A stretch of DNA of 64,000 bases, taken from contig NIVC01000598.1 of NCBI GenBank assembly GCA_002269645.1, positions 532,286 to 596,285 on the forward strand, read 5' to 3'. A program made the translations under genes and the position numbers. Positions 2,989 to 48,824 of this stretch are shown piece by piece (position 1 is the stretch's first letter; each line of letters starts with the position of its first letter). Below the pieces are notes generated by a model. That model searched no databases. It saw nothing but the letters and a program-made list of their open reading frames with translations, and had not been told where the DNA came from. This stretch comes from Macrostomum lignano (taxonomy: Eukaryota).

Positions 2989-3189
2989 TGTGTTTGCACT
3001 TCTATTCTTGATGTGAAATAAAAACTGCTGAAGTATATCCCAACGTGTAACATTCATTTTTTAGAATGGAAATAATATTACTTAGACATGAATGATAAGT
3101 ATTTTAGCATTTCTAGGCATCTTTAAAGCCTCATAATTAATTCAACTTGAACAATTAAATAGACTAGGGCCAAATAATATAAGTATTGA

Positions 3190-3400
3190 TTACACCTGCC
3201 CCAAATTGGGCCAGATGTGCAACCAACAGCTAGTAGCTTTTTTATGGCACTTCTGAAGGCTGCATATAGCTGTTCAGTCCATGGACTAGGGGGTCTTACA
3301 TATACCCTAAAGTACCCCTAATGCTGGTGCCAATTTTATAGCTGGGTGATCTGAAGCAATGCACAGTTAAGTGTGTTACTCAAGGCTCTTGCTCTAGGCT
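3190..3400 (-). mobile_element. Degenerate, 5'-truncated copy of the same SINE
   Basis: Aligns by eye to copy 1 (CACCTGCC...CCAGATGTGCAACC...CTGAAGGCTGC...GCTGGGTGA...CTCAAGG); CpGs are lost. Confidence 0.8.
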
Positions 3401-6400: not shown

Positions 6401-6489
6401 CCATAGCAAATTCAGTACATTTTAAAGAACTTGTAGGTTTGATTATATTTTGTTGAAAAGGAGTTTTAAATAATTGTAAATAACTTTGA

Positions 6490-6870
6490 ATTGCCCTTAT
6501 ACTAAGCTGTAATCTCCCTTGAAAATCGCCTTTATACCAGACTAATCTCCCTTGAGAATCGCCTAACACCAGGCTGTAATCTCCCTTGAGAATCGCCTTA
6601 TACCAGGCTGTAATCTCCCTTTAAAATCGCCTTATACTAGGCTATAATCTCCTTTGAGAATCGCCTTACACTAGGCTGTAATCTCCTTTGAAAATCACCT
6701 TATAACAGGCTGTAATCCCTTGAGAATCGCCTTATACTATGTTATAATCTCCTTTGAGAAATGCCTTACACCAGGCTGTAATCTCCCTTAAAAATTGCCT
6801 TCCTTTATACCAGACTAATCTCCCTTGAGAATTGCCTTATACCAGGCTGTAATCTCCTTTGAGAAGCTGT
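6490..6870. repeat. 34-bp minisatellite (GAGAATCGCCTTATACCAGGCTGTAATCTCCCTT)n; two more units at about 7265-7345
   Basis: About 10 degenerate tandem units seen directly. Confidence 0.9.
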
Positions 6871-16650: not shown

Positions 16651-19573
16651 CTAGGCCTTGTTCTTAAATACTCTTAAACAGCCGTCGAAATCTGCGGTCA
16701 CAATAATCTCGCCTTTGGCGTCCCTCGGCAAGCTGCCACCGGAGGGCGCGGGCACGCGCACGGACTCTGGATCCGCTTGCTCGTAGCTGCGAGTGTTGCG
16801 TTTGTCCAGCACCAGCAGTGGCTGCGGCGAGAACACAGCGCAAGTGACCACGGCCGGGCTGGCCCGTATGGCCTCCCAGAATGCGTTTCGATCGCTGCGG
16901 ACTACGCTGAACCGCGATTGGCGCTTAAAGCCGTGCTCGGTGCGCCACAGGTAGAAACAGCTGTCCTCGGAGCCGCTGATCACGTATCTGCGTTTTTATG
17001 CGAGTGGCATAGCAACTGGGGATCTGAGATAGAGGCTGCCTTAGCAACTGAGGATATGGGATAGAGGCTGCCTTAGCAACTGGCGATCTGGGATAGAGGC
17101 TGCCTTAGCAACTGGGGATCTGGGATAGTAAAATGCCCTAGCAACTGGGGATCTGAGATAGAGGCTGCCTTAGCAACTGGGGATCTGGGATAGAGGCTGC
17201 CTTAGAAACTGGGGATCTGGGATAGAGGCTGCCTTAGCAACTGGGGATCTGGGATAGACGCTGCCTTAGAAACTGGGGATCTGGGATAGTAACATGCCTG
17301 ACTGGCCAGCAACTGGGGATCTGGGATAGTAACTTCCCTAGCAACTGGGGATCTGGGATAGAGGCCGCCCTAGCAACTGGGGATCTGGGATAGAGGCTGC
17401 CCTAGCAACTGGGGATCTGGGATAGTAACTGCCTTAGCAACTGGGGATCTGAGATAGAGGCTGTCTTAGCAACTGGGGATCTGGGAAAGAGGGCTGCCTT
17501 AGCAACTGGGGATCTGGGATAGTAACTGCCTTAGAAACTGGGGATCTGGGATAGTAACTGCCTTAGAAACTGGTAATCTGGGATAGTAACTGCCTTAGCA
17601 TGGTTAGCAACTGTGGATCTGGGATAGTAACTGCCTTAACAACCGGGATCTGGGATAGTAACTGCCTTAGCAACTGGGGATCTGGAATAGTAACTGCCTT
17701 AGCAACCGGGGATCTGGGATAGTAACTGCCTTAGCAACTGGGGATCTGGAGTGTGGCGATGGCTCATTCGTTTCTCTTCAAGGTCTCACCTGCCAGTGGG
17801 ACTGAAGTGCGCATTGATATGCGACTTATTGGTGGCTCCCTTGTACTTGCACACGACCTGATAATCTTTGAGGTCAATGAGCCTCTGTCTAGAGTCGTTG
17901 CTGCTAACCAGGATCCGATTGGCGTCACCAGGCATGGTCTCGATGCCTGTCACCTGTCAGTCAATTGACAAATAGCCAATCGGGTTTGCGCATTAAAATT
18001 TAATAGCAAACTGAATCTTCCTTAATTATTTGCACGACACCCAGAGTGACAAATTGACACCCAGAGTGACAGATTGACATCCAGAGTAACAAATTGACAT
18101 CCAGAGTGACAGATTGACATCCAGACTGACAAATTGACATCCAGAGTGACAGATTGACATCCAGAGTGACAGATTGACATCCAGACTGACAAATTGACAC
18201 CCAGAGTGACAGATTGACATCCAGAGTGACAGATTGACATCCAGAGTGACAGATTGACATCCAGACTGACAGATTGACATCCAGACTGACAAATTGACAC
18301 CCAGAGTGACAGATTGACACCCAGAGTGACAAATTGACACCCAGAGTGACAAATTGACACCCAGAGTGACAAATTGACACCCAGAGTGACAAATTGACAC
18401 CCAGAGTGACAAATTGACATCCAGAGTGACAAACTGACACCCAGAGTGACAAAATGACAACCAGACTGACAAATTGACATCCAGAGTGACAAATTGACAC
18501 CCAGAGTGACAAACTGACACCCAGAGTGACAAATTGACATCCAGAGTGACAGATTGACACCCAGAGTGACAAATTGACACCCAGAGTGACAAATTGACAC
18601 CCAGAGTGACAGATTGACATTCAGAGTGACAAATTGACACCCAGAGTGACAGATTGACATCCATAGTGACAAACTGACATCCAGAGTGACAGATTGACAT
18701 CCAGACTGACAAATTGACATCCAGAGTGACAGATTGACATTCAGTGACAGATTGACATCCAGAGTGACAGATGACACCCAGAGTGACAGATTGACATTCA
18801 GAGTGACAAATTGACATCCAGAGTGACAAATTGACATCCAGAGTGACAGATTGACATTCAGAGTGACAAATTGACACCCAGAGTGACAGATTGACATCCA
18901 GAGTGACAGATGACACCCAGAGTGACAAATTGACATCCAGAGTGACAAATTGACACCCAGAGTGACAAATTGACATCCAGAGTGACAGATTGACATCCAG
19001 AGTGACAGATTGACATCCAGACTGACAAATTGACATCCAGAGTGACAAATTGACATACATTCAGAGTGACAAATTGACACCCAGTGTGACAGATTGACAC
19101 AGTAACAGTTAAATCCAATTGAATTAGAGCAAAAAAGTCACCTTGAAAAATCCCCTATTCCTCTTTCTCCTCTTCACGGTGCTCTCCTTGTACAGATCGA
19201 TCAGGGTGTGGTAGGACAACTTCTCAGCCGTATCGTAGAACATCACCCGGCCATCGTAGGTGCCAACAGCCAATAATTGGCCACCCCGGCAGAAGCACAG
19301 CGCCGTGATCATATTGGTGTGCCTGGTTGGCACCTGACGCCAAGCCGAAACCTTCTTGTCCGACAGGCTCCACAGCCTCAGCTTGCCGTCCATGCTGCCC
19401 GACACGAACACGCGGTCGTCTTTGGGGTGGAAGGCGATGGCAGGCACGTAGTCGGAGTGGGAGAAGCTGCACAGGCAGTCCTGCTTGTGCACGTGCCACA
19501 GGCGGACCTGCAGTAGGGAAAGGGCGGGAGAGCAGAGCGGCTAACAAGCACTGAAACTCACCAGTATAAACTC

Positions 19574-28276: not shown

Positions 28277-31200
28277 ATGCTGCAGGCAAAAATTTTGCTC
28301 ATCTTAGCCGCCGTCTGTTGCGGTCTCTTGACCCCGGTGGTAAGTCAGAACACCTACGGTTGCTCCGGAGCGGACCTCTCAAAGCGGAGGCTGACCAACT
28401 ATGGCAAATACACGTTCATCTTGCACGCCTTGGCACCGAACAGCAGCTATCTGGAGCCAAACATGGACTGCACCATCACCATCATTGGGTACAGTTCCAG
28501 CCGTTGGCTAGTCACCTTGGATACTATCAGCCTTAGCGCTTATCAGGTAAAGCTGATCGAATGCCTATCGGCCTTTTAAATAATGTATTCTTATACAAGT
28601 AGTGGATTTTACATGGTTTAGATAATAGAAGAGGATCAGGAGTAAGAATCAATTTTATCTTAGGACTTGGGATAGCTATACTCAGCAACATTGAAAAGTC
28701 GCCACTCTATGCGCCAGTGAGCAATTTCTCTTGGACTATTCTGAACTAAAAGGTACGAAAAAAACTGGTCAGGGTAACTTTAATCCATCCAATACCCGCC
28801 ACACCGCTCCACCACTTTATTCCTCAACTCAAGTCTGCCGCGGCGTAGCTGAATGCGTCACTCGCAAAGATTGAGAGACTTCGCATGCACTCTCAAAGGT
28901 GGCGACCACAGATGGAATCTTCTGTGATGGCGATTTTTCGATGTGCATTAAAAAGTCGCCACCTTTGAGAGTGCGCAGTAAATTCTAGCTCAGTATTGTC
29001 TTTTGAGCGACGCAACTTGCGCCAGAGTGAGGAGAGATTGGGAAGAGCGGAGGGCAAAGATTGGATGGATTGACGCTGCCGCCCGGTTTTCATGGTTTTT
29101 TCAAGCATTTTTAAGATCAAAATGGTTGGCCAGGTGATAGACGCTGGTCGAAAAACACTGCTCACTGGGTCAAAGGGTGGCGACTTTTCAATGTCGATGA
29201 TCCGTTATAGAAGTTCAATTCTTTTCTGGTAAGGCTGGATCTTTTTCATAAAGTACATTTTTAAGATGAGACGAGAACCGCATGCGTGGCGTGAGTTGCG
29301 TCACTTGGGTCTGATATCTAAACAAAGTTGACCATTGATTTCGGGGGTGGAAACTACTTTAACGTGTTGCTGAGTGCATGCACCAGAAAACAAAACGAAA
29401 AAAGTACGTATGAAGTGGTCGATCACTTGTGCAGACAAGTAAGCAGCATCTTCGATAAGAATGAGCGTTGATAAAATTTATTTTGATTTGATTTTTCGAA
29501 TAAAATTACTGAGACCCCAATCAGGCAAGACGCCAGGTTGTACTTTCATTAGATTTGTCAGTTTGCAGATAGTATGAGGTCTCCAAGTTTCTTAAGATCT
29601 AATACCAGAGTATAGCTCGTGAAACTCCAACTGCGAAGTGAGAATAAAAGCAATTTGTTTTGAGTCCCAAGCCTAAGTCTGATTATTCCATGGAATATAT
29701 AAGGTACTATATCTCTAGTGCTACATGTATACATCACGGACTACTTAAGTAGAAGGACGTAACACTCTAAAATGGTGCAAATTTTTTTGAAGGCCGATTT
29801 TTCAAACTGCTGCCATTTTTTTTCTTTGCAGATAAAGAGCTGATTCTTTCACCAGGTTGTCCAGAATTTATTCCAGTTTTATATAAAATATTAGTTTGTA
29901 GCTTTAAAAGCATTTTTGCGGAATAAAAGTACAGTAGAGTACATGTACCCCTAGAAATTCCAAAAGCTACGAAGCTAGGACACTATGAAGATGATCCTAC
30001 TGCTCTTTAAAAGTTACTCAAGATGACTAATTACTCAGAACTAGGCATACATTCATTCTCTACACAGTAACAAAAAAACAACGCAAAGACAATCGCATCC
30101 TGCAGACCTGCTGTAGGAAGCTGTAGCGAAAAGTTTTGTATAAAACTTGAAAGAAATAAACCTAGAGAATAATAAGTGATTTGTATTTACAAACTACAAT
30201 AAACATGTAAATAATAATTTCAAAAATGCAAAACGAAAACTTCTAAAACTTTACAAAAACTGTAAAGCACAAGCTAAACGATCTCTACTACAAGCAATAA
30301 ATCAAAGCAGAAAATCGGACTTCAAAAAAATTTCCACGAAATCCGAGTGTAACGTCCTCTATCTACTAGTGGTCCTTGGTATACATGTACGGGCAACAAG
30401 TAGCCGACTTCGCTTCCGTGCCAAGTCACATTAATTTGCGGCTGGTGCACGAAACTTCACCTGCGGCGGGCATGACAAGCGATCCCAACCCACACGAGAG
30501 GGCCAGCACCAAAGACAGAAAGACAGAGTTAGCATATATCTGACGCTGAGAAAGTCAGGGCCGCACTGTACAGCCCCCGTGCGAATGTGTGTGCCTGCGA
30601 AGAATGTAAGTGCGGTGCTCAGAGTTCAGCAGAATTGATTATAACTGCTAGCTTTCTTGCTGGCTTAAGATCAACAATCACCTTGATTTGCGGCCCTCTC
30701 TAATGCATGTGCGGCCATGAGAACGGAAGTACCGATAACGTTCCGAGAGGTCAATCGCCTGGGGGGTGCTAACTCCTGTTTTTCCTGTTTTTAGGCAACT
30801 GATAATAATAACAATAATAAAAAATTTATGACACCTTACCCTAATGGGCAGATGTGCAACCGCTATTGCGCGGCGCATCTGAAGGCTGCGTACGGCTGTT
30901 CAGTCCAAGGACTGGGGGGGGGGGGGGGGGTCGCCACACAGCCTCAATTACCCCAACTAATGCTGGCACCCATTTTACAGCTGGTGAACTGAAGCAATGC
31001 AGAGTTAAGTATCTAGCACAAGGACACAAATTCTTCCGAGTTGGGTCGAGAATCGAAAATCCGACCTTTCAGTCGTGAGTCCGACGCTCTGACCACTGGG
31101 CTACAACTAGGTTGACTGAAAATGTCGATATTTCTTCGCCCAGCAAGTCCCTAACCGGTACAATTCGTCACAATCTGTTTACGTCTCTTTCTCAGGCCGA

Positions 31201-32569
31201 GTTCGATGTCTACGAAGGCACCAGCACCAGAGGAAAGAACTTGATCTCTCTAAACAGCGCCGGGACTCTCTACCGACAGTTTGGCATCAGCAGCGGCAGC
31301 TTCACTGTCCGTCAGAAAACCAAATCAACGCCGGCCGGTAAGGCAACTGGCGTCCGGATGACCGTTGAACATCTGGAAACCTCAGATTGCCCAACTGGTT
31401 GGTACAAAGTCTCCAGCTCCGCTGGGTACTGCTACGGTGTGCCTAGACTGGCCCTGAACTTGACTTACGATGAGTCCGCTAAGGCCTGCAACATGCTGCT
31501 GGCCAACCTCGTCATGGGCAACTTCAACTACGACTCGATCTCGGCGGAGCTGTTCTCGGCGCCCTCGAGCGTTGTTAGCCCGCGACTGACATACTGGGTC
31601 GGCATGTACGAGAAGAACGACGAGCTGAAGTTCCTCAACAAGTACAACTCGCTTGAGTGAGTCTATTTTAACAGTTCATATCAAAGATTTTTGTAGTTGA
31701 TACCTTGGTCATAGTTGCAGATATTGTTAATAGGTGTTACCAAATTTCTTCGCATTGCCATCAGATTGAGTTTACAGAGTATAATTGAACGACTGGATAA
31801 TTGATGCTTAAGTCGTCCTTAAGATTCAACGCTGAATGCTTACAGACTGATTAAATGTCTTCCTTACAAAATACAATATGTACTCTCAAACAATTTTTCA
31901 CAACTTCGATGAACACGTTAGACCTCAACTGATTCTGATTCTTAACTAACTGGTCTACAATATTGCAGCAGCATTTCCGGCCGCCTGTGCAGTCAGACCA
32001 GCTCCGACTGCCAGTGCATCACTTACCAGAGCGGTCGCTTCTACAAAGACAACTGCAACACCAGGCGGCAGTACGTGTGCTACATGCCCAAGGGCGGAAC
32101 CGAGTCCTACTACAACCTTAAAAGCCAGATAAATTCAGCCAGCAACGTCATAAGCATGATTGCCATCGTGCTGACTGTCGGCTTCATTCTGGTCATCCTG
32201 ATCAGCCTCATCGTCGTCTTTGTCTGCTGCATTCGTCGGAACGCTGCCGCTAGACGAACTCGACGACAGAGCAACTTTAATGCCGCCAATTCCAACGTCA
32301 ACGCTGGACCATTCGTCATCGGCGAAGCCGCCGGAGTGCCGCCGTCCTACCCGATGCCGCCGCCACCCCCTCCGTTCACTGCCTCCCCCGCCGCTCCGCC
32401 CTACACAGCCACCGCGCCAGCCTACTCCACCTACTCCAACCTAGGCTTCGAGGCTGGCGGCAATGACGCTGCGGCGCCGGCGACGTCCGCTGGAGCCAGC
32501 GGCGGCGACAACGGCGAGAAACCGCCGCCCTACAATCCCGACTGGTCGAGAAACAATGTGGCGGCCTGA
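28277..32569 (+). CDS. Type I membrane protein: signal peptide + CUB-like domain + C-type lectin domain + TM + PPxY-rich tail, about 443 aa
   Basis: Exons 28277-28546 (phase 0), 31196-31656 (phase 2) and 31969-32569. CUB-like PNMDCTITI..RWLVTLDTISL..FDVYEG; CTLD CPTGW...YCY...A..AC...YWVG...C...C...YVC; hydrophobic span IAIVLTVGFILVILISLIVVFVCC. Confidence 0.85.
28679..29376. mobile_element. Degenerate Tc1/mariner-type non-autonomous element (same TIR family as 50913-51568)
   Basis: Left end TA|TACTCAGCAACATTGAAAAGT, right end TGTTGCTGAGTG. Internal inverted copies of AAAAGTCGCCAC near 28890, 28960 and 29180. Confidence 0.6.
30800..31106 (-). mobile_element. CORE-type SINE, copy 3
   Basis: High similarity to copy 1, with a short internal deletion. 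Confidence 0.85.
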
Positions 32570-33343: not shown

Positions 33344-34244
33344 TAAGAGTAGCTCGATCGAGACTGAAACTTAAAATTGAAGCTTTGGTCTACCGGGCAT
33401 ACAGGTCTACAGGTCAGGGCATACAGCTCGGTCGATGCTGCCTTTTACTTTTGAATGAGTCCAAGGTATTGGGCGTGTTTTAAATTTTGTGGCCAAAAAT
33501 TGATCATCAATTTATACTTTGCTTTAAAATATAATATTCATTGAATTTTTTGTCGTGTTCGGTGATTTATGTGCATCTTTAAAGGTACATTTTTCTGAGA
33601 AAACGTTTAAGAACTGGAAAACTTTTATGCACCTTTTTACATTTGGAATAATACGAGCGAGCGTACTTTGCTACCTGTAAATGCCTTGAAATTAGGGAGA
33701 ATCATTCAGGTTTTTCCGGTACTATATGAAAGATACTATTTTCTTTTGTTTCAATGTACTTCCTTAATTAGTGTCGATTTTCCAATTTCTTTTTTGTACA
33801 GCTCCGTGTTACTGTAGCGAGACATGAAATCTGCATATTCGAAACAAATTAGTAATGAATATTTTAAAGTAAACGATTAAAGCTCTAAATATTCAAGACC
33901 TTTGCAGAGAAGCACTTTAGGCTGGCAAAGTTAACACCAAGTTGCATTCAGATCTGACTTTAAGTTTACCCTAACTTGTGATTTTAATAAAATTATCTAT
34001 AATTTCTAATTAATAAACCGAATCATAAACTATTACGACATTTATAATAATGGAAATATTTGTTCACAAATTTATTGATTATATAAATAGTATTCATGAA
34101 GATAAGTCTATTCTCAATAACAAGCGGAATATTTGACGCAGACAAGTACATGTACGAGCATCCCATACAGAAAGAGAATAGATACTAGAGAGGGTGAGGA
34201 GAAGGAAACAGGAAATGGTGATAGGGCAGAGAAGTGGAGCTGAG

Positions 34245-34665
34245 ATGAGAGAGAACTGTGGAGTAGAGAGAGAGAGAGAGAGAGAGAGAGAAGTGGAGTA
34301 AAGGGAGAGAGAAGTGGAGTAGAGGGAGAGAGAAGTGGAGTAGATGGAGAGAGAAGTGGAAGTAAAGGGAGAGAGAAGTGGAGTAGAGGGAGAGAGAAGT
34401 GGAGTAGATGGAGAGAGAAGTGGAGTAGAGGGAGAGAGAAGTGGAGTAGATGGAGAGAGAAGTGGAGTAAAGGGAGAGAGAAGTGGAGTAAAGGGAGAGA
34501 GAAGTGGAGTAGAGGGAGAGAGAAGTGGAGTAAAGGGAGAGAGAAGTGGAGTAGAGGGAGAGAGAAGTGAAGTAAAGGGAGAGAGAAGTGTAGTAAAGGG
34601 AGAGAGAAGTGGAGTAAAGGGAGAGAGAAGTGGAGTAGAGGGAGAGAGAACTGTGGAGTAGCGAG
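34245..34665. repeat. 21-bp purine-rich minisatellite (GAAGTGGAGTAGAGGGAGAGA)n plus (GA)n
   Basis: Seen directly. Confidence 0.95.
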
Positions 34666-35245
34666 AGAGAGAGAGAAGACAGTGAAGTGGGGAGATGGTA
34701 GAGAATTAGAGAGAAAGGAAAATAGGAGAGAGATGAGATGACATTTACCAGACAAAGTTAACCTCCGGGAGATTCAAAGATTCAAAGATCAAAGATTCAA
34801 AGGATTGAAAGATCTGCATAAAATCTTGAACAGTGTAAGGTTTTTTGGAAGCTCGTAAAAGCCTAATAGAAAAAACCGACTTCAATAGAAGAGAAAGTAA
34901 ATATCGAATGCATCGAGTGTTATTTATTACACAGGGGAGGGCTAACTTTGAAGATTAAATGAGGATAAGCAATTTGAGAGACAATTAATTTCGAAAATGG
35001 AATTTTTTCACATGAATTCATATTAACAAATGAATTGACATTGTACAGAATGATAATCTATACCTATAAAAAATGAAAACTGTGTCTTCTATTTTAAATG
35101 GCAATCAGAAAACACGACTTCGGCCTGTCAACAATTACGTCGATACCTGTAGCTGTATTAACGTAAAATTGTGTACTCTATCTATAGGTAGAACAATGAA
35201 GCTTAGATTTATATATATAGATGAAGTCGTAACTAAATTGAGTCC

Positions 35246-37510
35246 TTACTGGTACAACGGTTTCAAGAGGCACTTTTTCGTTAGGGTGCAGGTGAACTCT
35301 GAAATCGTGCACGCGATCGTTGAATGGATCGGAAAACGAGCTCGCTCCATCTGAGCATTCACTCTGGTCATTATTTCCTTGATGTCTTCATCCGATTGAT
35401 GCTTCTCGATCTCGTTGCACACGGTCTGAACAAAGAAGGAGCCCGTCGTGCTGTTTCTGTAGGCCGGTGAGTCCTTGGTGCTCGATCTGCAGACCAGGAA
35501 GTCGCTTCCCTTAGGACTGAATCGTCTTTCCATCGGAGCGCTGTCAGTGGATTCTTCGCAGACTTCAATGGTTTGGCCTCGACAGGCCTGTACGAAGAAG
35601 ATCTTTGGCTTGCCGAGTAGGCCCGGACAGATGTCCGACTCGAAAGTCTCTAGAATGCGGTTCAGCTCCAGTGCATTGCCGTTGCTGCCAAAGATTGATT
35701 TTTCATTGCCGTGAGCCATGAGAAAGCAGACAAAGCAGCCGTGGTGCATAATTTCCTCCTCAATGGCAACTTCGTGCAGCAGTTTATCGATATCGTAGGC
35801 TGGCAGATCCTCAGCAACTCTCAATTCGAAGTCCAACCGTCCAAAGACCTCCTTGATGCGAGTGACATCCAGCTCTGAGCCAGGGCGGCAGTTAAACCCA
35901 GAGGAAGCGGAGTATTTGTTGATGTTAATCACCAGACAGACACCCTGAGGGGAGGTCATTGTGTATGACAGCAGGGGCACTCGTGGCTGAGTCCCAGAAA
36001 GGCCACCAACGCTGCTGCAAGTGAAGTTAAGAGTACGGTAAGTTCAAGTAAATTATTAACAGCGACTTGTGTGTATACTGACGTGTTTGGACGGTTGGGC
36101 TCAAGTTCCCCCGGCACCATCAAACTCTGGTCTTCGTGCTGCTGCAATTCCCATGCTGAGAGCAGTTCTTCCTGTTCGTTTCTGAAGTTCACATGCAAAA
36201 AAATAAAAGGGTCCCGTGCCTCAATTTACAACGGAAATGCAAGGCAGACAAGCAGAACGGTGGTAACTTACGTACGGTCTGCAGCTAGGGGTACAGTCTC
36301 CTTGTACTCTATTCCTTTAAGGCCTTCGATGGACCGACCACCTGAGATGTATGTTTGGGATTTATTCTTAGAGCCAGGATTTACGAATTTCATGCTTACT
36401 AATAAAACAGCTTTTCTTTACCGGTCTGGCGAGACTTTGTGGGCCATCGCTCAAGAGAGCGGACCTTCTGGTCACTCAATGGCGATAGTCTGGCGTAGGC
36501 AAATTTAGGACCGATGCGAACTCTGCTTCTGGTCTCTGCAGCGACGTGATTGTCTGGTTCTCGAAGTAGAAACACATACCTGCGATTGGAAAGCAAAGCT
36601 AGAAATTTACTTAGCGAATAATTAATAATAGTAATAATTGATAACACCTGCTCTAATGGGCAGATGTGCAATCGACAGCTCAGCCGCAGCTATTGTGCGG
36701 CGCATCTGAAGGCTGCGTACGGCTGTTCAGTCCAAGGACTGAGACGTCGCCACACCTAGCTCAATTACCCAAGCTAATGCTTGGCACCCATTTTACTGCT
36801 GGGTAAACTGAAGCAATGCAGAGTTAATGTCTTGCTCAAGGATACAAATTGTTCCGAGTTGGGTCGAGAATCGAACCTCCGATCTTTAAGTCGTGAGTCC
36901 GACGCTCTAACTACTAGGCTACAACGGCCCCTAGCCAATAAGCCATGCATCAATAGAGGAAATGAAAACTCACTTACATGTCGGGGTTAAGGCGTGATGC
37001 TTTGCTAGACGTGCTAGCCTTGCGCCAGAAGCCTGAGAGGTCACGGATACTTTCACCGAGTCGCTTCACCTGATAGCTCACGCTTTCATTTTCCAGAATG
37101 CGCCTCACAAAGTGCTCGCAATTGTTCTTTTGCAGGCTGTAGTGCGTTTCGCCAAGACACCCGAGACTCGTCTCAATGACAGCTTCACATTGCAGGTCGG
37201 AGCAGCTGCACTCAAACACGATTATCTTTGAGTCCTTGGCAACAGTATGGAAGTCTTCAACGGAAATGACGCCTTTACCGTCTTTCTTTGAGTTGGATAG
37301 TTGACAAATGATGTGACGCACGGGGCTGGACGCACCTGGGATGGATATTTCTCCAGCTTCCAATTTACTCAGGTACCCTTTGCCGATGTAGATAGCAAAG
37401 TGCTGATAGCAGCCTCTGTCAAAGGCCACAGCCCAGCCTGGCTTGAGCACTTCTAGAGCCTCGTCGACTTTGGCTTTTTCTTTGAAAACCAATTCCTTCT
37501 GCATGCACAT
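35246..37510 (-). CDS. LRAT/PLAAT (NlpC/P60)-domain caspase fusion protein, about 542 aa
   Basis: Exons 37510-36978 (phase 2, GTAAGT), 36579-36422 (phase 1), 36341-36272 (phase 2, GTAAGT), 36181-36083 (phase 2, GTCAGT) and 36014-35246 are all phase-compatible with no stops. LRAT motifs KPG...YQHFAIYIG and Y.L..NNCEHFV; caspase motifs GVCLVIN, RPGSELD, MAHG, KPKIFFVQACRG, DFL, AYRN..GSFFVQ. Confidence 0.85.
36620..36930 (-). mobile_element. CORE-type SINE, copy 4 (LRAT-caspase intron 1)
   Basis: Aligns to copy 1. Confidence 0.85.
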
Positions 37511-39324: not shown

Positions 39325-40665
39325 AATAATTCAGGTGAACAAGGGGAAAATTCGGGGAAACAAAAATTCTGGGGGATAAGGGGAGAATTCAGGGGGAACA
39401 AGGGGAGAATTCTTGGGGAATGAGGGGAGAATTCTCGGAGAACAAGGCGAGAATTCAGGGGGAACAAGGGGAGAATTCGGGGGGGGGGGCAAGGGGAGAA
39501 TTCGGGGAACAAGGGGAGAATTCTTGGGGAATAAGGGGAGAATTCTCGGAGAACAAGGGGAGAATTCGAGGGGAACAAGGGGAGAACTCTTGGAGGGACA
39601 AGGGCAGAATTATGGGGGAACAAGGGGAGAATTCGGGGAGAACAAGGGGAGAATTCTTGGGGGGACAAGGGGAGAATTCGGTGGAGGGGCGCAAGGGGAG
39701 AATTCGAGGAACAAGGGGAGAATTCGGGGGGAACAATGGGAGAATTCGGAGGGAACAAGGGGAGAATTCTTGGGAATAAGGGGAGAAATCTCGGAGAACA
39801 AGGTGAGAATTCGGGGGGAAAAAGGGGAGAATTCGGGGGGAACAAGGGGAGAATTCGAGGGGAACAATGGGAGAATTCTTGGGAATAAGGGGAGAATTCT
39901 CGGAGAACAAGGTGAGAATTCGGGGGGAACAAGGGGAGAATTCGGGGGGAACAAGGGGAGAATTCGAGGGGAATGAGGGGAGAATTCTCGGAGAACAAGG
40001 CGAGAATTCGGGGGGAACAAGGGGGGAACTCTTGGAGGGACAAGGAGAGAATTCGGGGTGGACAAGGGGACAATTCAGGGGGAACAAGGGGAGAATTCGG
40101 GGGGGGCAAGGGGAGAATTCGGGGAACAAGGGGAGAATTCGGGGAACAAGGGGAGAATTCTTGGGGAATAAGGGGAGAATTCTCGGAGAACAAGGGGAGA
40201 ATTCGGGGGGAACAAGGGGAGAATTCGGAGGGAACAAGGGGAGAATTCTTGGGAATAAGGGGAGAATTCTCGGAGAACAAGGTGAGAATTCGGGAGGAAC
40301 AAGGGGAGAATTCGAGGGGAACAAGGGGAGAACTCTTGGAGGGACAAGGGCAGAATTATGGGGGGAACAAGGGGAGAATTCGGGGAGAACAAGGGGAGAA
40401 TTCGGGGGGGCAAGGGGAGAATTCGGGGAGAACAAGGGGAGAATTCGAGGGGAACAAGGGGAGAATTCGGGGAACAAGGGGATAATTCGGGGGAACAAGG
40501 GGAGAATTCGAGGGGAACAAGGGGAGAATTCTTGGGGGGACAAGAGGAGAATTCGTGGGGGGGGGCAGGGGAGAATTCGGGGAACAATGGGGTAATTTGG
40601 GGAAACAAGGGGAGAATTCGGGGGGAACAAGGGGAGAATTCTTGGGGGGACAAGGGGAGAAAAAA
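39325..40665. repeat. 22-bp G-rich minisatellite (CAAGGGGAGAATTCGGGGGGAA)n
   Basis: Seen directly; EcoRI site in most units. Confidence 0.96.
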
Positions 40666-43126: not shown

Positions 43127-46100
43127 TCAAACGTACTCGCCGGATGCGCTTTCCATAAGTCGAATAAGATTATTTAGCCCAATCAGATAGCCGTCCTCGT
43201 GACTGCCAGGTGTCCAAGGTACGGTGTGCTGCAGTCTTTCGCCGTCCGGCCTCGGGAGGGTCTTAGCAAAGTCGATCATCCAGACGCCAGCACGTAGAGA
43301 CGCGTCGTGCAGGAACAGCAAGGAAGAGCCGATGAACTGCAGAAATTCAATGTGTAGGTTGTACCATTTGTCCCGTTATGATTATTCACATTATTCAGAA
43401 TTGACTCTCTCTATGCAATTCATTTACTCATGAACAAATGCATTATTATAAGTATGCATTGGTTTTGACTGTACAACTTTACCATTCACATGTAACAATA
43501 CATCGTAGAATACCCAATATTGCAAAACTTGTTCACACCACATTAACAATGACACCACATCACATTGACTGATATGTTGATGTATCTGAACAAGGCAGCT
43601 AAAATCAAATACAAACTACGAGCTAAGTAATCATGCAAAACTTTGGCTTTATTTAATGGCTGTGTCGCCATGACAACTTAATCGTGGATACTCAATGGCT
43701 GATTCTCTCTAGCGTCTCAAAGTCTCTCTAGCCTCCGAAACATTTTCTACTTCGGTTTTCTCACCTCATGCCTGGCAAAGAAGTCTGATTTCTCTAGCGC
43801 TGACTTGAGTTCACGCAGTCTGGCAGCAAACGAACGCATCACAGCGGCGTTGTAGGCGCAAAAGTAGTGAATGACGGGCAAAACCTACGAGATTTGGTAA
43901 ACAAGTTGAGCATGAGAAACCGATCAAGTACTCTCATCAAAAATCAATATGTTACTCATTGTTTCCAATAGATTTTGCGCTCAACACAAGCAATGCAGCC
44001 CCACATCATCAAGCATCGGTGGTTCAGTGGTAGAATGCTCGCCTGCCACCCGGACGGTCCAGGGTTCGAATCCCGGCCGTTGCAATTTATTTAGTACAGA
44101 AATACATTTTTCATACCTCGGACTCCGTTTTTATAGTTTTTAAGCGACGACTGTGCGCTGAACACGATTCCGGATCTCTTGTCTGGAAAAGTTAATAGAG
44201 ACTACGGATTAGTAAAGTGAAAAAAATTATAATTATATTATCGCTTTAAGACAGTAAATGTTAATATTTGTAACCTTGATTGCTTCCAAACGAAAGCCCA
44301 GAGAGACTGTAGTACTCTCCTGTTCTCGAAACTGCAGTGAAAAAATAATTTAAAGTTTATTTTGTATTCATTTCTTATATACTAAAAAGTGTGATTTATC
44401 CTAATAAGTTATTTTTCCTCCAATTCAAAAAACAATACCTCGTATGCTGAATTATTGAATTTGTAAGCTCTATGCAGCTTACCAGCATGTATCTCAGCTT
44501 GGTAATCGCTCCAGCTCTTCTCTCCTCCTCTGTCGGCTGGTTCGGGTCCACGGCCGTCATTTTCTTGTACAGGTCGGGCCGCAACTCGGGGTTGGCAGTG
44601 TCCGACTCCAGGAACGTGCGGCAGCCCATCTTCACGTCCATTATGCTCGGATTCGAGAAGTGCTGCATCAGGTCTTCCAGTTCTAAGTAAGCTATTGGAA
44701 CATTTCAGATACAGTATGCATGCCTCAAGTCTTTAAAGTCATGTGCGTGTGTACAACTGATAAAATAGATTCCTTCTCATCAACACCAATTCTTCCCCAT
44801 CTTTCCCTATCTAGCCAAATCCTTCCCTATCTATCCCAATCCTTCCTTATCTATCCTAATCCTTCCCTATTTAGCCCAATCCTTCCCTATCTATCCCAAT
44901 CCTTCCCTATCTAGCCCAATCCTTCCCTATCTAGCCCAATCCTTCCCCATCTATCCCAATCCTTCCCTATCTAGCCCAATCCTTCCCTATCCATCCCAAT
45001 CCTTCCCTATCTAGCCCAATCCTTCCCCATCTATCCCAATCCTTCCCTATCTAGCCCAATCCTTCCCTATCCATCCCAATCCTTCCCTATCTAGCCCAAT
45101 CCTTTCCTATCTATCCTAATCCTTCCTTATCTATCCTAATCCTTCCTTATCTATCCCAATCCTTCCCCATCTATCCCAATCCTTTCCTATCTATCCCAAT
45201 CCTTCCCCATCTATCCCAATCCTTCCCCATCTATCCCAATCCTTCCCTATCTAGCCCAATCCTTCCCTATCCATCCCAATCCTTCCCTATCTAGCCCAAT
45301 CCTTTCCTATCTATCCTAATCCTTCCTTATCTATCCTAATCCTTCCTTATCTATCCCAATCCTTCCCCATCTATCCCAATCCTTCCCTATCTAGCCCAAT
45401 CCTTCCCCATCTATCCCAATCCTTCCCTATCTAGCCCAATCCTTCCCTATCCATCCCAATCCTTCCCTATCTAGCCCAATCCTTCCCCATCTATCCCAAT
45501 CCTTCCCTATCTAGCCCAATCCTTCCCTATCCATCCCAATCCTTCCCTATCTAGCCCAATCCTTTCCTATCTATCCTAATCCTTCCTTATCTATCCTAAT
45601 CCTTCCTTATCTATCCCAATCCTTCCCCATCTATCCCAATCCTTTCCTATCTATCCCAATCCTTCCCCATCTATCCCAATCCTTCCCCATCTATCCCAAT
45701 CCTTTCCTATCTATCCCAATCCTTCCCCATCTATCCCAATCCTTCCCCATCTATCCCAATCCTTCCCCATCTATCCCAATCCTTCCCCATGTATCCCAAT
45801 CCTTCCCCATCTGTCCCAATCCTTCCCCATCTATCCCAATCCTTCCCCATCTATCCCAATCCTTTCCTATCTATCCCAATCCTTCCCCATCTATCCCAAT
45901 CCTTCCCCATGTATCCCAATCCTTCCCCATCTGTAACAATCCTTCCCCATCTATCCCAATCCTTCCCCATCTATCCCAATCCTTCCCTATCTATCCCAAT
46001 CCTTCCCCATTATACTTAAAGCCTTCTCAATCCGCCCAACGGCTTCCAATTCCCCCACTAGTAGGGAGTGAGCTGTATTATATTGCACATACTCAAGCGT

Positions 46101-48824
46101 ATCGAAAGTGCTACGCAAATGATATGCGGTTGGATCTTATTTCTGTTAGCAAGTCCGCATGAGAAGTATGATAACAAAGCAAAACTCACATTCGCCACTG
46201 AGCTGTACTTCTCGATGGAATTTCGGCACAAACTGCTGCATCCCGCTGTCCTGCAGCATCAGCTGCCTGTAGGCTGACAGCTCGTGCGACTCCGAGGCAT
46301 CTCGACGCTTCAGGATGGTCCACGGGCTGGAGACCGCAAATGCGCCTGATTAGCAGTTTGTTCGAATAGAATTTTATTGCTTGAAATATGCGGATAAAAT
46401 CTACAAGTATCAGTTTGTGTTACTAAGGATGATGCTAATGACCCTAATGGGCAGATGTGCAACTGACAGCTCAGCCGCAGCTATTGCGCGGCGCATCTGA
46501 AGGCTGCGTACGGCTGTTCAGTCCAAGGACTGGGGGGAGGGGGTCGCTATACACAGCCTCAATTACCCCAGCTAATGCTGGCACCCATTTTACAGCTGGG
46601 TGAACTGAAGCAATGCAGAGTGAAGTGCTCAAGGACACAATTGTTCCAAGTGGGTCGAGAATCGAACCACCGACCTTCAAGTCGTGAGTCTGACGCTCTA
46701 AACCTTAGGCTACAACCCCCACCTATAGGCTAAGCTTAAAGTGCTTTGCATTTACTCCTTATATTAAGGTCACAGGACGCTTAAAACTTCACGTGATGCT
46801 AAGAATGATATGTGACAGAACGTCCCGTAATGCAACAAAAAGAAATGTGATGCTAAAAATTCTAGTGTTGCTATAAGACAAGTTCTAATTGACACTTTTG
46901 ACAAACAACCTTGCGGAAGTTACGAGATGCCTAAAACTTGACTCTTACAGTACTTTTCCGTACATAAAATCAGATTACAACGATGGTCACACAGGTGCAA
47001 TCAGTTGAGCTCAACGAGCATATCAACTCACCGGAGTGGCCCGACAACTGCACAAACTCGTTCTTGCGACCCTGTTCCATGCCTGCCTTGTTCGTATCCA
47101 ACTCGGCTGTGAGCTGCAAATTGATCTTTGATTTGTTTATCGTTGAATCGTGGCATTGAAAAACCTCAAGCTTTCAGCAGTTGTCAGTCGCTTAGTTGAC
47201 AAGCGCTCTCAATAGTCTATGTTAAAAAAACGAATGTACAAGTACACATGTACATGAAAACAACACTGAAACTCTGATAGTACATTGCACTTTTGCTGTC
47301 TACTGTCACTGCTCCTGTCAACAGCTGTCAAATGTCCTGGTCTGTCTCTGTCGGCTGCTGCATGCTGCATGTACATCATAATATAATATAAGCTCTTAAT
47401 TCTCTTCCCCCATCATCTGTAGCCTCTCACTCATATTTTGACCACACCCATGATTCTAAAGTGCACAACTGCAGGCAGACCAAGGCATTTCTTGGGCTAG
47501 AAAGTAAGTGTGCTATCAAGCTACACACAGCTGAAGTTCCATCATCACAGTTTTAACTCGAATTATTCCAATATCGATCGTAACTCTCCCAGCGAGTTGC
47601 TGTGCGGTAGCTAGCTAACCATCAGAGTTCCGTTTAAGGATATCAACATGAAGCTGTATTAAGCCTCTACAGCAGGTGTCGGCAAACGTTTTTTCCCTCA
47701 AGAGCCAGATAAAAAATTCAGCTCATGGCTGTGGGCCAGATAAGAAAGGGAAAGGCGAGAGAATAGAAGATTCTAAGAGATAAGAGAGAGGAGAGACGAG
47801 AGATGGGATCAGAGAAGAGAGAAGGGAGAGAAGGGAGAGAAAAGAGGAGAGGAGAGGAGAGGAGAGGAGAGGAGAGGAGAGGAGAGGAGAGGAGAGGAGA
47901 GGAGAGGAGAGAAGAGGAAAGTGGAGGGGAGAGAGGAAGGAGAGGGGAGAGAGGAGAGTGGGCAGGAATGGAGTCAGTATGGCATAGCAGGGCAGTTGCA
48001 GTGTTGAGGTAGATAGGAAGTCTATTAAAAAAGAAAAGTCCAGTCCTGTACGCATTCCTCTTAAAGGAGGGGAGAGAGGAAGGAGAGAGGAGAGAGGAGA
48101 GAAGAGAGGGGAGAGAGGAGAGTGAATAGAGAAGAGACCCAAACCTTGAGCGGGCCGGATTACTATTGTGAAGTTTCAAAGGACTCGAAGGCCGGAGAGA
48201 CACTACGGGCCGCGTGTGGCCCGCAGGCCGAAGTGTGCCGAGCCCTGCTCTACAGCATGCTCGCACAAGTCCTCGCACAGCCTCTGGTTAACGAACAAAT
48301 CTTATCAAATCTTTTTAGCCTGATTAAACGCTGCGGCTCTGGCAAACTCAGCTTCCAAGATTATCTCACGGGTTTTCCAGAGCCGCCACCGCTCCCTGCG
48401 CGCTTTCTTATCATAAAGTTCAACTTCTAACGCCAAAATTTATTGCCCTAGTGCGCCTGAAGCTTCTCAAAATTACCAGAGTGAGCACGGAGGACTCGAC
48501 CCGCCAAGAGGTCTGCACGAACACTCGGTAGACGTCCTCCTCACTGAGCCAGTCGCTTTCACGATCGGCCAGCCTTGCCTTCAGCTCGATGGCGGCTCTT
48601 GTCGGAGTCGCTGGTGTCACCTCGTTGAACTGCCCGGTAGTGACGGTGGTTGACACCACAGTTGCCGCCGCTGTCGCTGCAGCAGCTACGCCTGTCCCTG
48701 GTACATAGCTGGAGTAAGCCGGGTTCTCAACTCCGTTGGAGCCACCGCCCTCCGGTATTGATTGGCTGCGGCTTCTGTGCCGGCGGCAGCAGCTGTTGTA
48801 GCGGCTACTTGCGCTGGCGCCCAT
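43127..48824 (-). CDS. IP3K: Inositol 1,4,5-trisphosphate 3-kinase (ITPKA/B/C family), about 415 aa
   Basis: Exons 48824-48477, 47113-47032, 46345-46190, 44691-44483, 44331-44275, 44182-44117, 43884-43765 and 43336-43127 have matching phases (1248 nt). Motifs [62 protein letters not shown] probable 5'UTR exon lies near 49556-49620. Confidence 0.9.
44013..44084 (+). tRNA. tRNA-Gly(GCC)-like sequence, probably a pseudogene, antisense in an IP3K intron
   Basis: GCATCGGTGGTTCAGTGGTAGAATGCTCGCCTGCCAC...GGTTCGAATCCCGGCCGTTGCA has intact A and B boxes and a GCC anticodon, but mismatches in the acceptor (T4-T), anticodon (two) and T stems. Confidence 0.75.
44790..46012. repeat. 20-bp minisatellite (CCAATCCTTCCCTATCTAGC / CCAATCCTTCCCCATCTATC)n filling most of an IP3K intron
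   Basis: Seen directly. Confidence 0.97.
46425..46719 (-). mobile_element. CORE-type SINE, copy 5 (IP3K intron)
   Basis: Aligns to copy 1. Confidence 0.85.
47673..48247. mobile_element. hAT (Charlie-like) MITE with an internal (GAGAG)n expansion
   Basis: TIRs CAGGTGTCGGCAAAC / GTGTGCCGAGCCCTG. Perfect 8-bp TSD CTCTACAG at 47665-47672 and 48248-48255. Confidence 0.88.

What the first reader, a model, noticed from the sequence alone, without database searches (positions are those of the whole stretch)
35246..37510. LRAT/PLAAT lipid-enzyme domain fused to a caspase in one spliced gene
Seen: five exons join in frame (phases 2, 1, 2, 2; GT/AG ends; the last three introns are only 80, 90 and 68 bp), linking an N-terminal domain with H37 (YQHFAIY) and C131 (NCEHF) to a caspase through a ~120-aa linker. 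The caspase keeps His (MAHG, 35711-35713), Cys (QACRG, 35582-35584), both Asp-pocket arginines (RPGS, AYRN) and an IETD/S-like interdomain site (EESTD/S). Known: animal caspase prodomains are typically CARD, DED or short peptides; the LRAT/PLAAT/H-rev107 family are His/Cys phospholipase-acyltransferases linked to cell death, organelle degradation and antiviral responses. Inference: a membrane-acting lipid enzyme coupled to a protease. The LRAT domain may localise or activate the caspase, or auto-cleavage at linker Asp sites (NPD, AAD, HED) may release a lipase effector. The second catalytic His position looks like Gln (HIICQ), so lipase activity is uncertain. I do not know of a described protein with this architecture, but could not search.
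Basis: partly seen in the sequence, partly recalled or inferred. Interest (0 to 1): 0.9.

Follow-up and report, generated by a model that had tools for sequence, protein, structure and literature searches.

The report
Flatworm caspase with LRAT/PLAAT pro-domain
This is a real five-exon gene of the flatworm Macrostomum lignano that joins a PLAAT/LRAT-type lipid-enzyme domain to a complete caspase; the protein is already in sequence databases as an unnamed product, I found it in no other organism, and no paper I could search describes it.

Summary
Five GT..AG exons on the minus strand (37510-35246) splice into a 542-aa ORF. It has an N-terminal LRAT/PLAAT domain (Pfam 1e-15), a ~140-aa disordered linker and a C-terminal caspase domain (Pfam 2e-43). 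The caspase keeps His388, Cys431 (QACRG), both S1 arginines and an EESTD/S inter-subunit site.

The protein is 100% identical to the RNA-seq-derived Macrostomum lignano model PAA80090.1 (BOX15_Mlig004795g2). A paralog at about 40-47% identity has the same architecture, the same first three intron phases and an identical intron-1 position, so the fusion is old and is not a read-through artefact. That paralog has lost the caspase Cys and one Arg but keeps the LRAT His/Cys.

Active human PLAAT1 has Asn there, so activity is plausible.

An exhaustive search of 1.84 billion protein representatives found the LRAT+caspase combination only in M. lignano. A 2024 survey of lophotrochozoan caspases does not list it.

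Verdict: a new variant of a known kind, a caspase with an unusual enzymatic pro-domain. It is lineage-restricted, and its function is untested. My preferred mechanism is a lipid/membrane-directed pro-domain driving proximity activation, and that is inference.

The parts
36978..37510 (-). Exon 1 (533 nt, aa 1-178): start codon, the whole LRAT/PLAAT domain and an amphipathic helix at aa 146-165
   Evidence: ORF and GTAAGT donor. Pfam LRAT 1.1e-15. PDB hits to PLAAT3 at 2e-08. AF2 core pLDDT >90, and Foldseek gives PLAAT3 7zom at TMt 0.74. The ATG at 37510 is the first start after an in-frame stop.
37400..37402 (-). Codon of His37 (H-box, YQHFAIY), equivalent to the PLAAT3 His23 general base
   Evidence: Nearly invariant among 102 LRAT-family hits and invariant in both paralogs.
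37301..37303 (-). Codon of Gln70 (HIICQ), the position equivalent to PLAAT3 His35, the third triad residue
   Evidence: Clade alignment aligns IICQL with LVCHF, LLCHL and YLIHY of M. lignano LRAT relatives. AF2 places aa 65-72 in a beta strand and K49 in a low-confidence loop. Gln is invariant in both paralogs.
37118..37120 (-). Codon of Cys131 (NCEHF), the LRAT/PLAAT nucleophile
   Evidence: N130, C131 and E132 are invariant in the 59-sequence alignment.
36580..36977 (-). Intron 1 (398 nt, phase 2, GTAAGT..CAG), containing a tRNA-derived SINE-like element at 36890-36922
   Evidence: The intron sits at the identical codon position and phase in the paralog.
36422..36579 (-). Exon 2 (158 nt, aa 178-231): conserved part of the linker (YVFLLRE...KFAYARLSP)
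   Evidence: 41% identity to the paralog's exon 2. Open only in the frame used. AF2 pLDDT <50.
36272..36341 (-). Exon 3 (70 nt): linker
   Evidence: The paralog's exon 3 is also 70 nt, with the same phases. Open only in the frame used.
36083..36181 (-). Exon 4 (99 nt, symmetric phase 2/2): linker, with no counterpart in the paralog
35246..36014 (-). Exon 5 (769 nt including the stop codon, aa 287-542): the whole caspase domain in one exon
   Evidence: Pfam Peptidase_C14 2.1e-43. Best solved structure is human caspase-3 at 1.2e-37. AF2 pLDDT is about 90 or above except in the inter-subunit loop 435-450.
35711..35713 (-). Codon of caspase catalytic His388 (MAHG)
   Evidence: Aligned to caspase-3 SHG. 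Coordinates.
35582..35584 (-). Codon of caspase catalytic Cys431 (QACRG)
   Evidence: Aligned to caspase-3 QACRG. Coordinates.
35885..35887 (-). Codon of Arg330 (RPGS), S1-pocket arginine equivalent to caspase-3 Arg64
35456..35458 (-). Codon of Arg473 (AYRN), S1-pocket arginine equivalent to caspase-3 Arg207
35543..35545 (-). Codon of Asp444 (EESTD/S), candidate inter-subunit auto-processing site
   Evidence: Aligned to IETD/S of caspase-3. It lies in a loop with pLDDT <50. Asp-Ser is also present in the paralog.

Best explanation
SHOWN. The region holds one expressed, five-exon gene of the free-living flatworm Macrostomum lignano (PAA80090.1 / UniProt A0A267G1Y2). It encodes a 542-aa protein built as two folded domains on a flexible tether:
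- An N-terminal PLAAT/LRAT-fold domain. It has His37 and Cys131, Gln70 at the third triad position, and no transmembrane anchor.
- A ~140-aa disordered linker.
- A caspase-3-like protease domain with a complete active site.

The fusion predates a gene duplication. A paralog at about 40-47% identity keeps the same architecture and the same intron positions and phases. That paralog has lost the caspase Cys and one S1 Arg but keeps the LRAT His/Cys/Gln. Both exist as near-identical homeologous copies in this polyploid genome.

INFERRED (about 0.35-0.4 on its own). The LRAT domain serves as an enzymatic pro-domain, taking the place that CARD, DED or ankyrin repeats hold in other long-pro-domain caspases. 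LRAT-family enzymes form a covalent acyl-thioester on the NCEHF cysteine when they attack a phospholipid. This would tether or concentrate the zymogen on a membrane. Crowding would then drive caspase-domain dimerisation and auto-cleavage at EESTD444/S and within the disordered linker. The Cys-less paralog would act as a heterodimerising regulator, in the way cFLIP regulates caspase-8.
For: Gene and splicing. All introns are canonical, each linker exon is open only in the frame used, and intron retention truncates the product.

Domains.

Identity to annotated models: the product is identical to an annotated protein, and an independent ML2-assembly model (A0A1I8GH60) also fuses the two domains. 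The Mlig_3_7 annotation was built from RNA-seq transcripts, with a pipeline that cuts transcripts at trans-splice and poly(A) sites (PMC5730564).

Paralog: it has the same architecture, phases 2,1,2, an identical intron-1 codon position and a 70-nt exon 3. Identity to the window protein is 50% over LRAT, 41% over exon 2 and 47% over the caspase.

Homeologs: the copy in L005 is intact, with 18 exon substitutions of which only 8 change an amino acid.

LRAT fold and active site: AF2 core pLDDT >90 and Foldseek gives PLAAT3 at TMt 0.74. H37, Q70 and NCEHF are invariant in both paralogs. Decayed relatives (L001 copy 3 and the fifth LRAT gene) have lost the His and Cys, which argues for selection on the dyad in the fused genes.

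Gln70: human PLAAT1 is active with His-Asn-Cys, the third residue only orients the first His, and LRAT forms a thioester intermediate (PMC4624172).

Linker: aa 161-299 and loop 435-450 have pLDDT <50 and pTM is 0.48, which fits independent domains on a flexible tether.

Caspase relatives: the closest caspase domains are long-pro-domain ANK-caspases of the same species, at 45% identity.
Against: No functional data exist. No lipid, acyl-transfer or protease activity, localisation or expression pattern was available.

No hydrophobic anchor follows the LRAT domain, whereas most PLAATs need a C-terminal transmembrane segment (PMC4624172). The best 19-residue hydropathy window lies in the caspase core.

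From my memory of the literature, not checked here, a His-to-Gln change at the equivalent LRAT residue (H72Q) inactivated LRAT, so Gln70 could mean a slow or dead enzyme.

By sequence the caspase domain scores best against effector caspase-3, not an initiator.

I could not see model coordinates, so the triad geometry is unverified.

I could not inspect RNA-seq reads, so a caspase-only isoform cannot be excluded. It could arise from a spliced-leader acceptor at exon 5, with Met306 as the start.
Confidence: 0.5

Rival explanations
1. Two-warhead death effector. Both domains are effectors. Once the caspase is activated by an upstream protease or by itself, it cuts the disordered linker. This frees an active PLA/acyltransferase that degrades organelle or plasma membranes, as vertebrate PLAATs do in lens organelle clearance, while the caspase cleaves proteins.
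For: Both active sites are intact. The ~140-aa linker is disordered and contains six Asp residues, one of which (D214) is invariant in both paralogs. The caspase domain is closest to effector caspase-3. The paralog with a dead caspase still keeps the LRAT dyad, so LRAT chemistry matters in its own right.
Against: Most candidate linker Asp sites are not conserved between the paralogs. There is no transmembrane anchor, which PLAATs need for cellular membrane activity (PMC4624172). In the paralog the caspase cannot do the cutting itself. There are no activity data.
Confidence: 0.2
2. The LRAT-fold domain is a catalytically inert adaptor or regulatory pro-domain. It binds a partner protein or lipid, or auto-inhibits the caspase, and its conserved His and Cys are structural leftovers.
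For: The third triad residue is Gln rather than His. There is no membrane anchor. Several relatives in the same cluster have lost catalytic residues, so non-catalytic LRAT folds do arise in this lineage. Viral 2A H-box/NC proteins of this fold are also structural matches.
Against: H37 and the full NCEHF motif are invariant between paralogs that share only 50% identity in this domain, while decayed copies lose exactly these residues. An amide residue at the third position is compatible with activity in PLAAT1.
Confidence: 0.2
3. Annotation artefact. An LRAT gene and a short-pro-domain caspase gene lie in tandem and are joined only in read-through or unprocessed precursor transcripts, and the mature mRNAs are separate.
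For: About 7% of M. lignano transcripts are multi-gene precursors resolved by trans-splicing (PMC5730564). The exon-1 ORF ends in a TAA inside the donor site. Exon 5 has an in-frame Met306 just before the first caspase strand. One homeolog is annotated as a 279-aa caspase-only protein.
Against: That 279-aa model comes from two 1-nt homopolymer deletions in a copy that still carries the LRAT exon. The fused frame is kept across four introns here and three in the diverged paralog, with the same phases. The three linker exons are open only in the frame used, and exon 2 is conserved at protein level. The annotation pipeline cuts at trans-splice sites. A second assembly and annotation also gives a fused model.
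Confidence: 0.05

Closest known systems
Vertebrate PLAAT/HRASLS1-5 and LRAT (Pfam PF04970, NlpC/P60 superfamily)
   Same: Same fold (Foldseek to PLAAT3 7zom, TMt 0.74). It has the H-box His and the NCEHF Cys. A polar third residue orients the His, and PLAAT1 uses Asn.
   Different: The third residue is Gln. A ~20-aa insertion sits between strands 2 and 3 (aa 45-64, low pLDDT). There is no C-terminal transmembrane anchor. The domain is fused to a caspase. Sequence identity is only about 25-30%.
Human caspase-3/-7 (peptidase family C14A)
   Same: Best solved-structure match (1.2e-37). R64, H121, Q161, C163 and R207 equivalents are all present, QACRG is identical, and there is an IETD/S-like EESTD/S loop.
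   Different: The pro-region is ~300 aa with an enzyme domain, against 28 aa in caspase-3. The whole caspase domain is encoded in one exon.
Ankyrin-repeat (ANK) caspases of platyhelminths, and other unusual lophotrochozoan pro-domains (kinase-like in M. lignano, PARP, Z-binding; Horkan et al. 2024, PMC11463336)
   Same: The closest caspase-domain relatives are M. lignano ANK-caspases, at 45% identity and 199 bits. The principle is the same: a long non-CARD, non-DED pro-domain on a caspase.
   Different: The pro-domain here is an LRAT/PLAAT enzyme fold and not ankyrin repeats. The ANK-caspase gene has an intron inside the caspase domain and no shared intron position upstream. The survey does not list an LRAT pro-domain.
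Caspase-8 / cFLIP pair (active caspase plus pseudo-caspase paralog)
   Same: The window gene has a complete caspase active site. Its paralog keeps the caspase fold (Pfam 5e-32) but has QTSQK in place of QACRG and lacks the second S1 Arg. This holds in both homeologous copies.
   Different: There are no death-effector domains. Heterodimerisation is only an analogy and was not tested.

Membership tests
Caspases (Peptidase_C14, MEROPS C14A) | Significant match to the caspase domain profile, above the curated threshold | tested here: met
   PF00656 at 149.1 bits against a cut-off of 21.4, covering aa 311-534 and profile positions 2-231 of 233.
Caspases (Peptidase_C14, MEROPS C14A) | Catalytic His-Cys dyad in the (S/A)HG and QACxG motifs | tested here: met
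   MAH388G and QAC431RG align to caspase-3 SHG and QACRG.
Caspases (Peptidase_C14, MEROPS C14A) | S1 pocket for Asp: two Arg and one Gln (caspase-3 R64, Q161, R207) | tested here: met
   R330, Q429 and R473 align to these positions.
Caspases (Peptidase_C14, MEROPS C14A) | Asp-specific endopeptidase activity, with activation by dimerisation or inter-subunit cleavage | not testable with these tools
   Only a candidate site was found (EESTD444/S, in a loop with pLDDT <50).
LRAT/PLAAT (H-rev107) family, PF04970 | Significant match to the LRAT profile, and the PLAAT fold | tested here: met
   PF04970 at 58.4 bits against a cut-off of 24.3. PLAAT3 at 2e-08 by sequence. AF2 plus Foldseek gives 7zom at TMt 0.74 and probability 1.00.
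LRAT/PLAAT (H-rev107) family, PF04970 | H-box histidine and NCEHF cysteine nucleophile | tested here: met
   H37 and N130-C131-E132-H133-F134.
LRAT/PLAAT (H-rev107) family, PF04970 | Third polar triad residue (His in PLAAT2-5 and LRAT, Asn in PLAAT1) | tested here: inconclusive
   The position holds Gln70 by clade alignment and AF2 strand assignment. Pairwise HMMER and hhalign put Lys49 there.
LRAT/PLAAT (H-rev107) family, PF04970 | C-terminal hydrophobic membrane anchor (PLAAT1-4, LRAT) | tested here: not met
   No hydrophobic segment follows the domain. The maximum 19-residue Kyte-Doolittle score is 1.15 and lies in the caspase core. A disordered linker follows the domain. PLAAT5 also lacks the anchor, so this does not exclude membership.
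LRAT/PLAAT (H-rev107) family, PF04970 | Phospholipase A1/2 or acyltransferase activity through an acyl-thioester | not testable with these tools
   Needs a biochemical assay.
CARD/DED initiator caspases | Death-fold pro-domain (CARD or DED) | tested here: not met
   No CARD or DED hit in Pfam, even at E<=1.
Platyhelminth ANK-caspases | Ankyrin-repeat pro-domain | tested here: not met
   There is no Ank family hit. Only the caspase domains are related, at 45% identity.

The most novel reading that the evidence does not exclude
This is a lipid-triggered cell-death or innate-defence switch unique to macrostomid flatworms. The LRAT domain would covalently capture an acyl chain from exposed, damaged or foreign membrane phospholipid. 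That would nucleate caspase dimerisation on the membrane. A pseudo-caspase paralog carrying the same lipid-reactive head would tune the response. This would be the first caspase whose activation platform is an enzymatic reaction with a lipid and not a death-fold protein scaffold.
Probability: 0.12. Interest if true: 0.8.

Novelty: new variant of a known kind. Interest (0 to 1): 0.55.

Why it matters
Caspase activation is normally explained by death-fold adaptors (CARD, DED). Recent surveys show that lophotrochozoans have swapped in other pro-domains (ankyrin, kinase-like, PARP, Z-binding) whose logic is unknown.

An LRAT/PLAAT pro-domain would physically couple a membrane-lipid-reactive cysteine enzyme to a protease. 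Vertebrate members of that enzyme family are themselves implicated in organelle breakdown, tumour suppression and picornavirus entry.

M. lignano has RNAi and transgenesis, so the gene and its natural Cys-less paralog give a tractable test of two questions. One is whether lipid chemistry can serve as a caspase activation platform. The other is whether caspases and phospholipases are deployed as a single death effector.

The significance is limited because, as far as my searches reach, the fusion occurs in only one species.

Tried and rejected
1. Lys49 as the third LRAT triad residue. Pairwise HMMER and hhalign place it opposite PLAAT3 His35. I rejected this because the eight-member M. lignano clade alignment lines up IICQ70L with the LVCH, LLCH and YLIH strands of relatives, K49 is not conserved in the paralog, and AF2 puts K49 in a low-confidence loop and aa 65-72 in a strand.

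2. The 279-aa caspase-only annotation (PAA65912.1) as evidence for separate mRNAs. I rejected this because its locus carries the LRAT exon, plus two 1-nt homopolymer deletions.

3. Exon-shuffling signature. The closest ANK-caspase gene has no intron at the same position upstream of the caspase domain, and it has an extra intron inside the domain. This gave no support either way.

4. Literature searches. Searches for LRAT + caspase + architecture, for PF04970 + PF00656, and for the four gene identifiers found nothing relevant. Supplements of the 2024 caspase survey are not held.

5. Intron-1 tRNA-like sequence. ARAGORN and Rfam do not call it a tRNA. It is a dispersed repeat with three copies in the window.

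6. A second, profile-based word-index search returned the same 15 proteins as the first.

7. dN/dS between the paralogs was not attempted, because synonymous sites are saturated at about 45% protein identity. The homeolog comparison (10 silent and 8 replacement changes) is too small for per-domain statistics.
Full report
WHAT IS IN THE SEQUENCE.

On the minus strand, five exons join through four canonical GT..AG introns. The exons are 37510-36978, 36579-36422, 36341-36272, 36181-36083 and 36014-35246. The introns are 398, 80, 90 and 68 nt, in phases 2, 1, 2 and 2. The spliced reading frame is 1629 nt and gives 542 aa.

This is more than chance would give:
- Each of the three short linker exons is stop-free only in the frame that the splicing model uses.
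- Retaining any intron gives a premature stop.
- The ATG at 37510 is the first start codon after an upstream in-frame stop.

Pfam finds an LRAT domain (PF04970, aa 22-139, E=1.1e-15) and a caspase domain (PF00656, aa 311-534, E=2.1e-43), both far above the curated thresholds.

WHERE IT COMES FROM, AND WHETHER THE FUSION IS REAL.

The 542-aa product is 100% identical over its full length to NCBI PAA80090.1, 'hypothetical protein BOX15_Mlig004795g2', of the free-living flatworm Macrostomum lignano (UniProt A0A267G1Y2).

That annotation is not an ab initio prediction. The Mlig_3_7 gene set was built from RNA-seq-assembled transcripts. A pipeline cuts precursor transcripts at experimentally mapped trans-splice and poly(A) sites before ORFs are called (PMC5730564). 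A separate annotation of the older ML2 assembly (A0A1I8GH60, A0A1I8GKZ5, A0A1I8G067) also joins the two domains.

The strongest argument comes from a paralog, PAA65113.1 / PAA73134.1 (539 aa).
- It is about 40% identical by BLASTP and 47% in global alignment. By region, identity is 50% in LRAT, 41% in exon 2 and 47% in the caspase.
- It has the same two domains.
- Its locus (L001) has introns in phases 2, 1, 2, and intron 1 splits the same codon two residues before the shared VFLLR motif.
- Its third exon is 70 nt, exactly as in the window gene.

Only the window gene's 99-nt symmetric exon 4 lacks a counterpart. A reading frame kept across the same introns in genes this diverged cannot be a read-through artefact.

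Two further near-identical homeologous copies of the window gene exist in this polyploid genome. One (L005) is intact, with 18 exon substitutions of which 8 change the protein. The other (L004) is annotated as a 279-aa caspase-only protein, but it carries the LRAT exon and merely has two single-base deletions in homopolymer runs. That model is therefore not evidence for a separate caspase mRNA.

I could not look at reads, so an additional caspase-only isoform remains possible.

THE TWO DOMAINS.

The caspase domain is encoded entirely by exon 5. It aligns best to human caspase-3 (1.2e-37). The two sequences share an identical QACRG motif, the SHG/AHG histidine, both S1 arginines, the GSWFIQ-like motif, and an EESTD/S loop opposite IETD/S.

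The N-domain matches human PLAAT3, PLAAT2 and PLAAT4 by sequence (2e-08 and weaker). An AlphaFold2 model built with 59 homologs has a core pLDDT above 90. It superposes on PLAAT3 (7zom, TMt 0.74), PLAAT2, PLAAT4 and the Aichivirus 2A H-box/NC protein.

In the full-length model the two domains are confident. Residues 161-299 and the inter-subunit loop 435-450 fall below pLDDT 50 and pTM is 0.48, so this is two folded domains on a ~140-aa flexible tether. No hydrophobic anchor follows the LRAT domain.

THE THIRD LRAT TRIAD RESIDUE.

HMMER and hhalign place Lys49 opposite PLAAT3 His35. The M. lignano relatives of this domain resolve the question differently. Their (L/I)(V/L/I)CH(L/F)S strand, and YLIHYS in a shorter relative, align with IICQ70LS of the window gene and FICQLT of the paralog. 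The segment between, aa 45-64, is a lineage-specific insertion that is not conserved and is modelled with low confidence. Residues 65-72 form a strand.

This need not kill activity. The review PMC4624172 states that the third residue only orients the first histidine, and that active human HRASLS1/PLAAT1 has Asn there. From memory only, a His-to-Gln mutation at the equivalent LRAT position inactivated LRAT, so activity remains open.

FAMILY CONTEXT.

The paralog has QTSQK in place of QACRG and has lost the second S1 arginine, in both of its homeologous copies. It still keeps the LRAT His, Gln and NCEHF. It is a pseudo-caspase with an apparently intact LRAT head.

Next to it in L001 lie several related genes:
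- A decayed third LRAT-caspase copy. Its LRAT His and Cys are lost. Its caspase is split over three frames but still shows MAHG and QACRG.
- Two genes that join the same kind of LRAT domain to a sub-threshold UBR-box-like zinc finger.

The catalytic His and Cys are lost in the decayed copies but invariant in the two fused lineages. This argues that LRAT chemistry is under selection, independently of caspase catalysis.

The nearest caspase domains are ankyrin-repeat caspases of the same species, at 45% identity.

HOW IT PROBABLY WORKS.

What is shown is the architecture, the intact active sites, the disordered tether and the evolutionary retention.

My preferred mechanism is inferred, at about 0.35-0.4. 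The LRAT domain would be an enzymatic pro-domain in the structural position of CARD, DED or ankyrin repeats. By reacting with, or binding to, membrane phospholipid it would concentrate the zymogen. LRAT-family enzymes form an acyl-thioester on the NCEHF cysteine (PMC4624172). The caspase domains would then dimerise and auto-process at D444 and in the tether. The Cys-less paralog could act like cFLIP.

The rivals are:
- A two-warhead effector in which linker cleavage frees an active lipase (0.2).
- A catalytically inert adaptor or auto-inhibitory pro-domain (0.2).
- An annotation artefact (0.05).

D214 and the inter-subunit Asp-Ser are.

IS IT KNOWN?

The protein is in NCBI and UniProt under generic automatic names.

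An exhaustive HMMER search with aa 1-231 against 1.84 billion representative proteins gave 102 hits. Pfam scanning of all of them found a caspase domain only in the two M. lignano paralog clusters. Two word-index searches of 5.8 billion clusters, with the full protein and with a profile, listed PF04970+PF00656 only for three M. lignano clusters.

Full-text searches found no paper that describes the combination or mentions the gene identifiers. The most relevant study is a 60-genome survey of lophotrochozoan caspases that includes M. lignano. It reports only a kinase-like unusual pro-domain in this species and states that no other unexpected pro-domain was detected in platyhelminths (PMC11463336).

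These searches cannot exclude independent LRAT-caspase fusions whose LRAT domain is too diverged to be hit. A direct InterPro architecture query is the missing test.

VERDICT.

The functional interpretation is plausible but untested. This is a new variant of a known kind: a caspase with a previously undescribed, enzymatic LRAT/PLAAT pro-domain. It is lineage-restricted, and it comes with a natural pseudo-caspase paralog.

It fits the emerging picture of pro-domain diversification in lophotrochozoan caspases, so a specialist would be interested but not astonished. I score interest at 0.55.

Noticed in passing
window 36890-36922 (intron 1), 31072-31104, 2684-2716, all minus strand: A tRNA-like sequence, apparently a tRNA-derived SINE-like dispersed repeat, occurs three times in the window, against 0 expected by chance. 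ARAGORN and Rfam do not call it a tRNA.
   Followed up: partly
window 44013-44084 (+): A tRNA-Gly(GCC) gene (ARAGORN; Rfam 44.9 bits) lies inside the span of the neighbouring IPK-domain gene (about 43127-47080, minus strand).
   Followed up: no
window-wide, e.g. 102-1743, 18036-19099, 34228-34672, 39337-40661, 44794-46007: The window is packed with minisatellites of 20-34 bp period and long tetranucleotide arrays (24 TRF rows). The 21-bp array just 3' of the gene produces the repetitive 'LPLLHFS' pseudo-ORFs and the strong local GC-skew swings.
   Followed up: partly
window ~28277-32569 (+) and ~43127-47080 (-): The flanking annotated genes are a 443-aa product with a faint C-type-lectin hit downstream and a 288-aa inositol polyphosphate kinase (IPK) upstream. 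The lectin-like neighbour is also found beside the homeologous copies in L004 and L005, so the synteny is conserved.
   Followed up: no
L004 (NIVC01001607.1), equivalent to window 37322 and 36111: The homeolog annotated as a 279-aa caspase-only protein (PAA65912.1, Mlig004795g1) has the LRAT exon but carries 1-nt deletions in a C-run (exon 1) and a G-run (exon 4). This is either a PacBio homopolymer error or a young pseudogene.
   Followed up: yes
L005 (NIVC01003880.1) 4001-6516: A second intact 542-aa copy (PAA49434.1). It differs from the window gene by 18 exon substitutions (8 amino-acid changes) and has an extra ~259 nt in intron 1.
   Followed up: partly
L001 (NIVC01001680.1) 2851-5234: A decayed third LRAT-caspase copy lies upstream of the paralog. 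Its LRAT His and Cys are replaced. Its caspase part is split over three frames but still reads MAHG and QACRG.
   Followed up: partly
L001 9828-11441 and 12074-13669; also P0016, P0017: M. lignano has a small family of genes that join the same LRAT-type N-domain to a Cys/His zinc finger. The finger matches the UBR box only below threshold (17-19 bits against a cut-off of 25.2). Two of these genes sit directly beside the LRAT-pseudo-caspase paralog.
   Followed up: partly
aa 1-2 of the window protein and of seven relatives: All eight members of this LRAT clade begin Met-Cys. A conserved Cys2 could be an acylation site or, after Met removal, an N-terminal-Cys degron. The neighbouring UBR-box-like fusions make the degron idea worth a look, but it is pure speculation.
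   Followed up: no
P0004-P0007, P0012 (M. lignano proteins); L003: The free-living M. lignano encodes several ankyrin-repeat caspases. The 2024 survey (PMC11463336) states that ANK caspases are restricted to parasitic platyhelminths.
   Followed up: partly
P0003 / P0120, aa ~425-470: The LRAT-caspase paralog is a pseudo-caspase. It has QTSQK in place of QACRG and lacks the second S1 arginine, in both homeologous copies, while the caspase His (MAHG) and the LRAT dyad are kept.
   Followed up: yes
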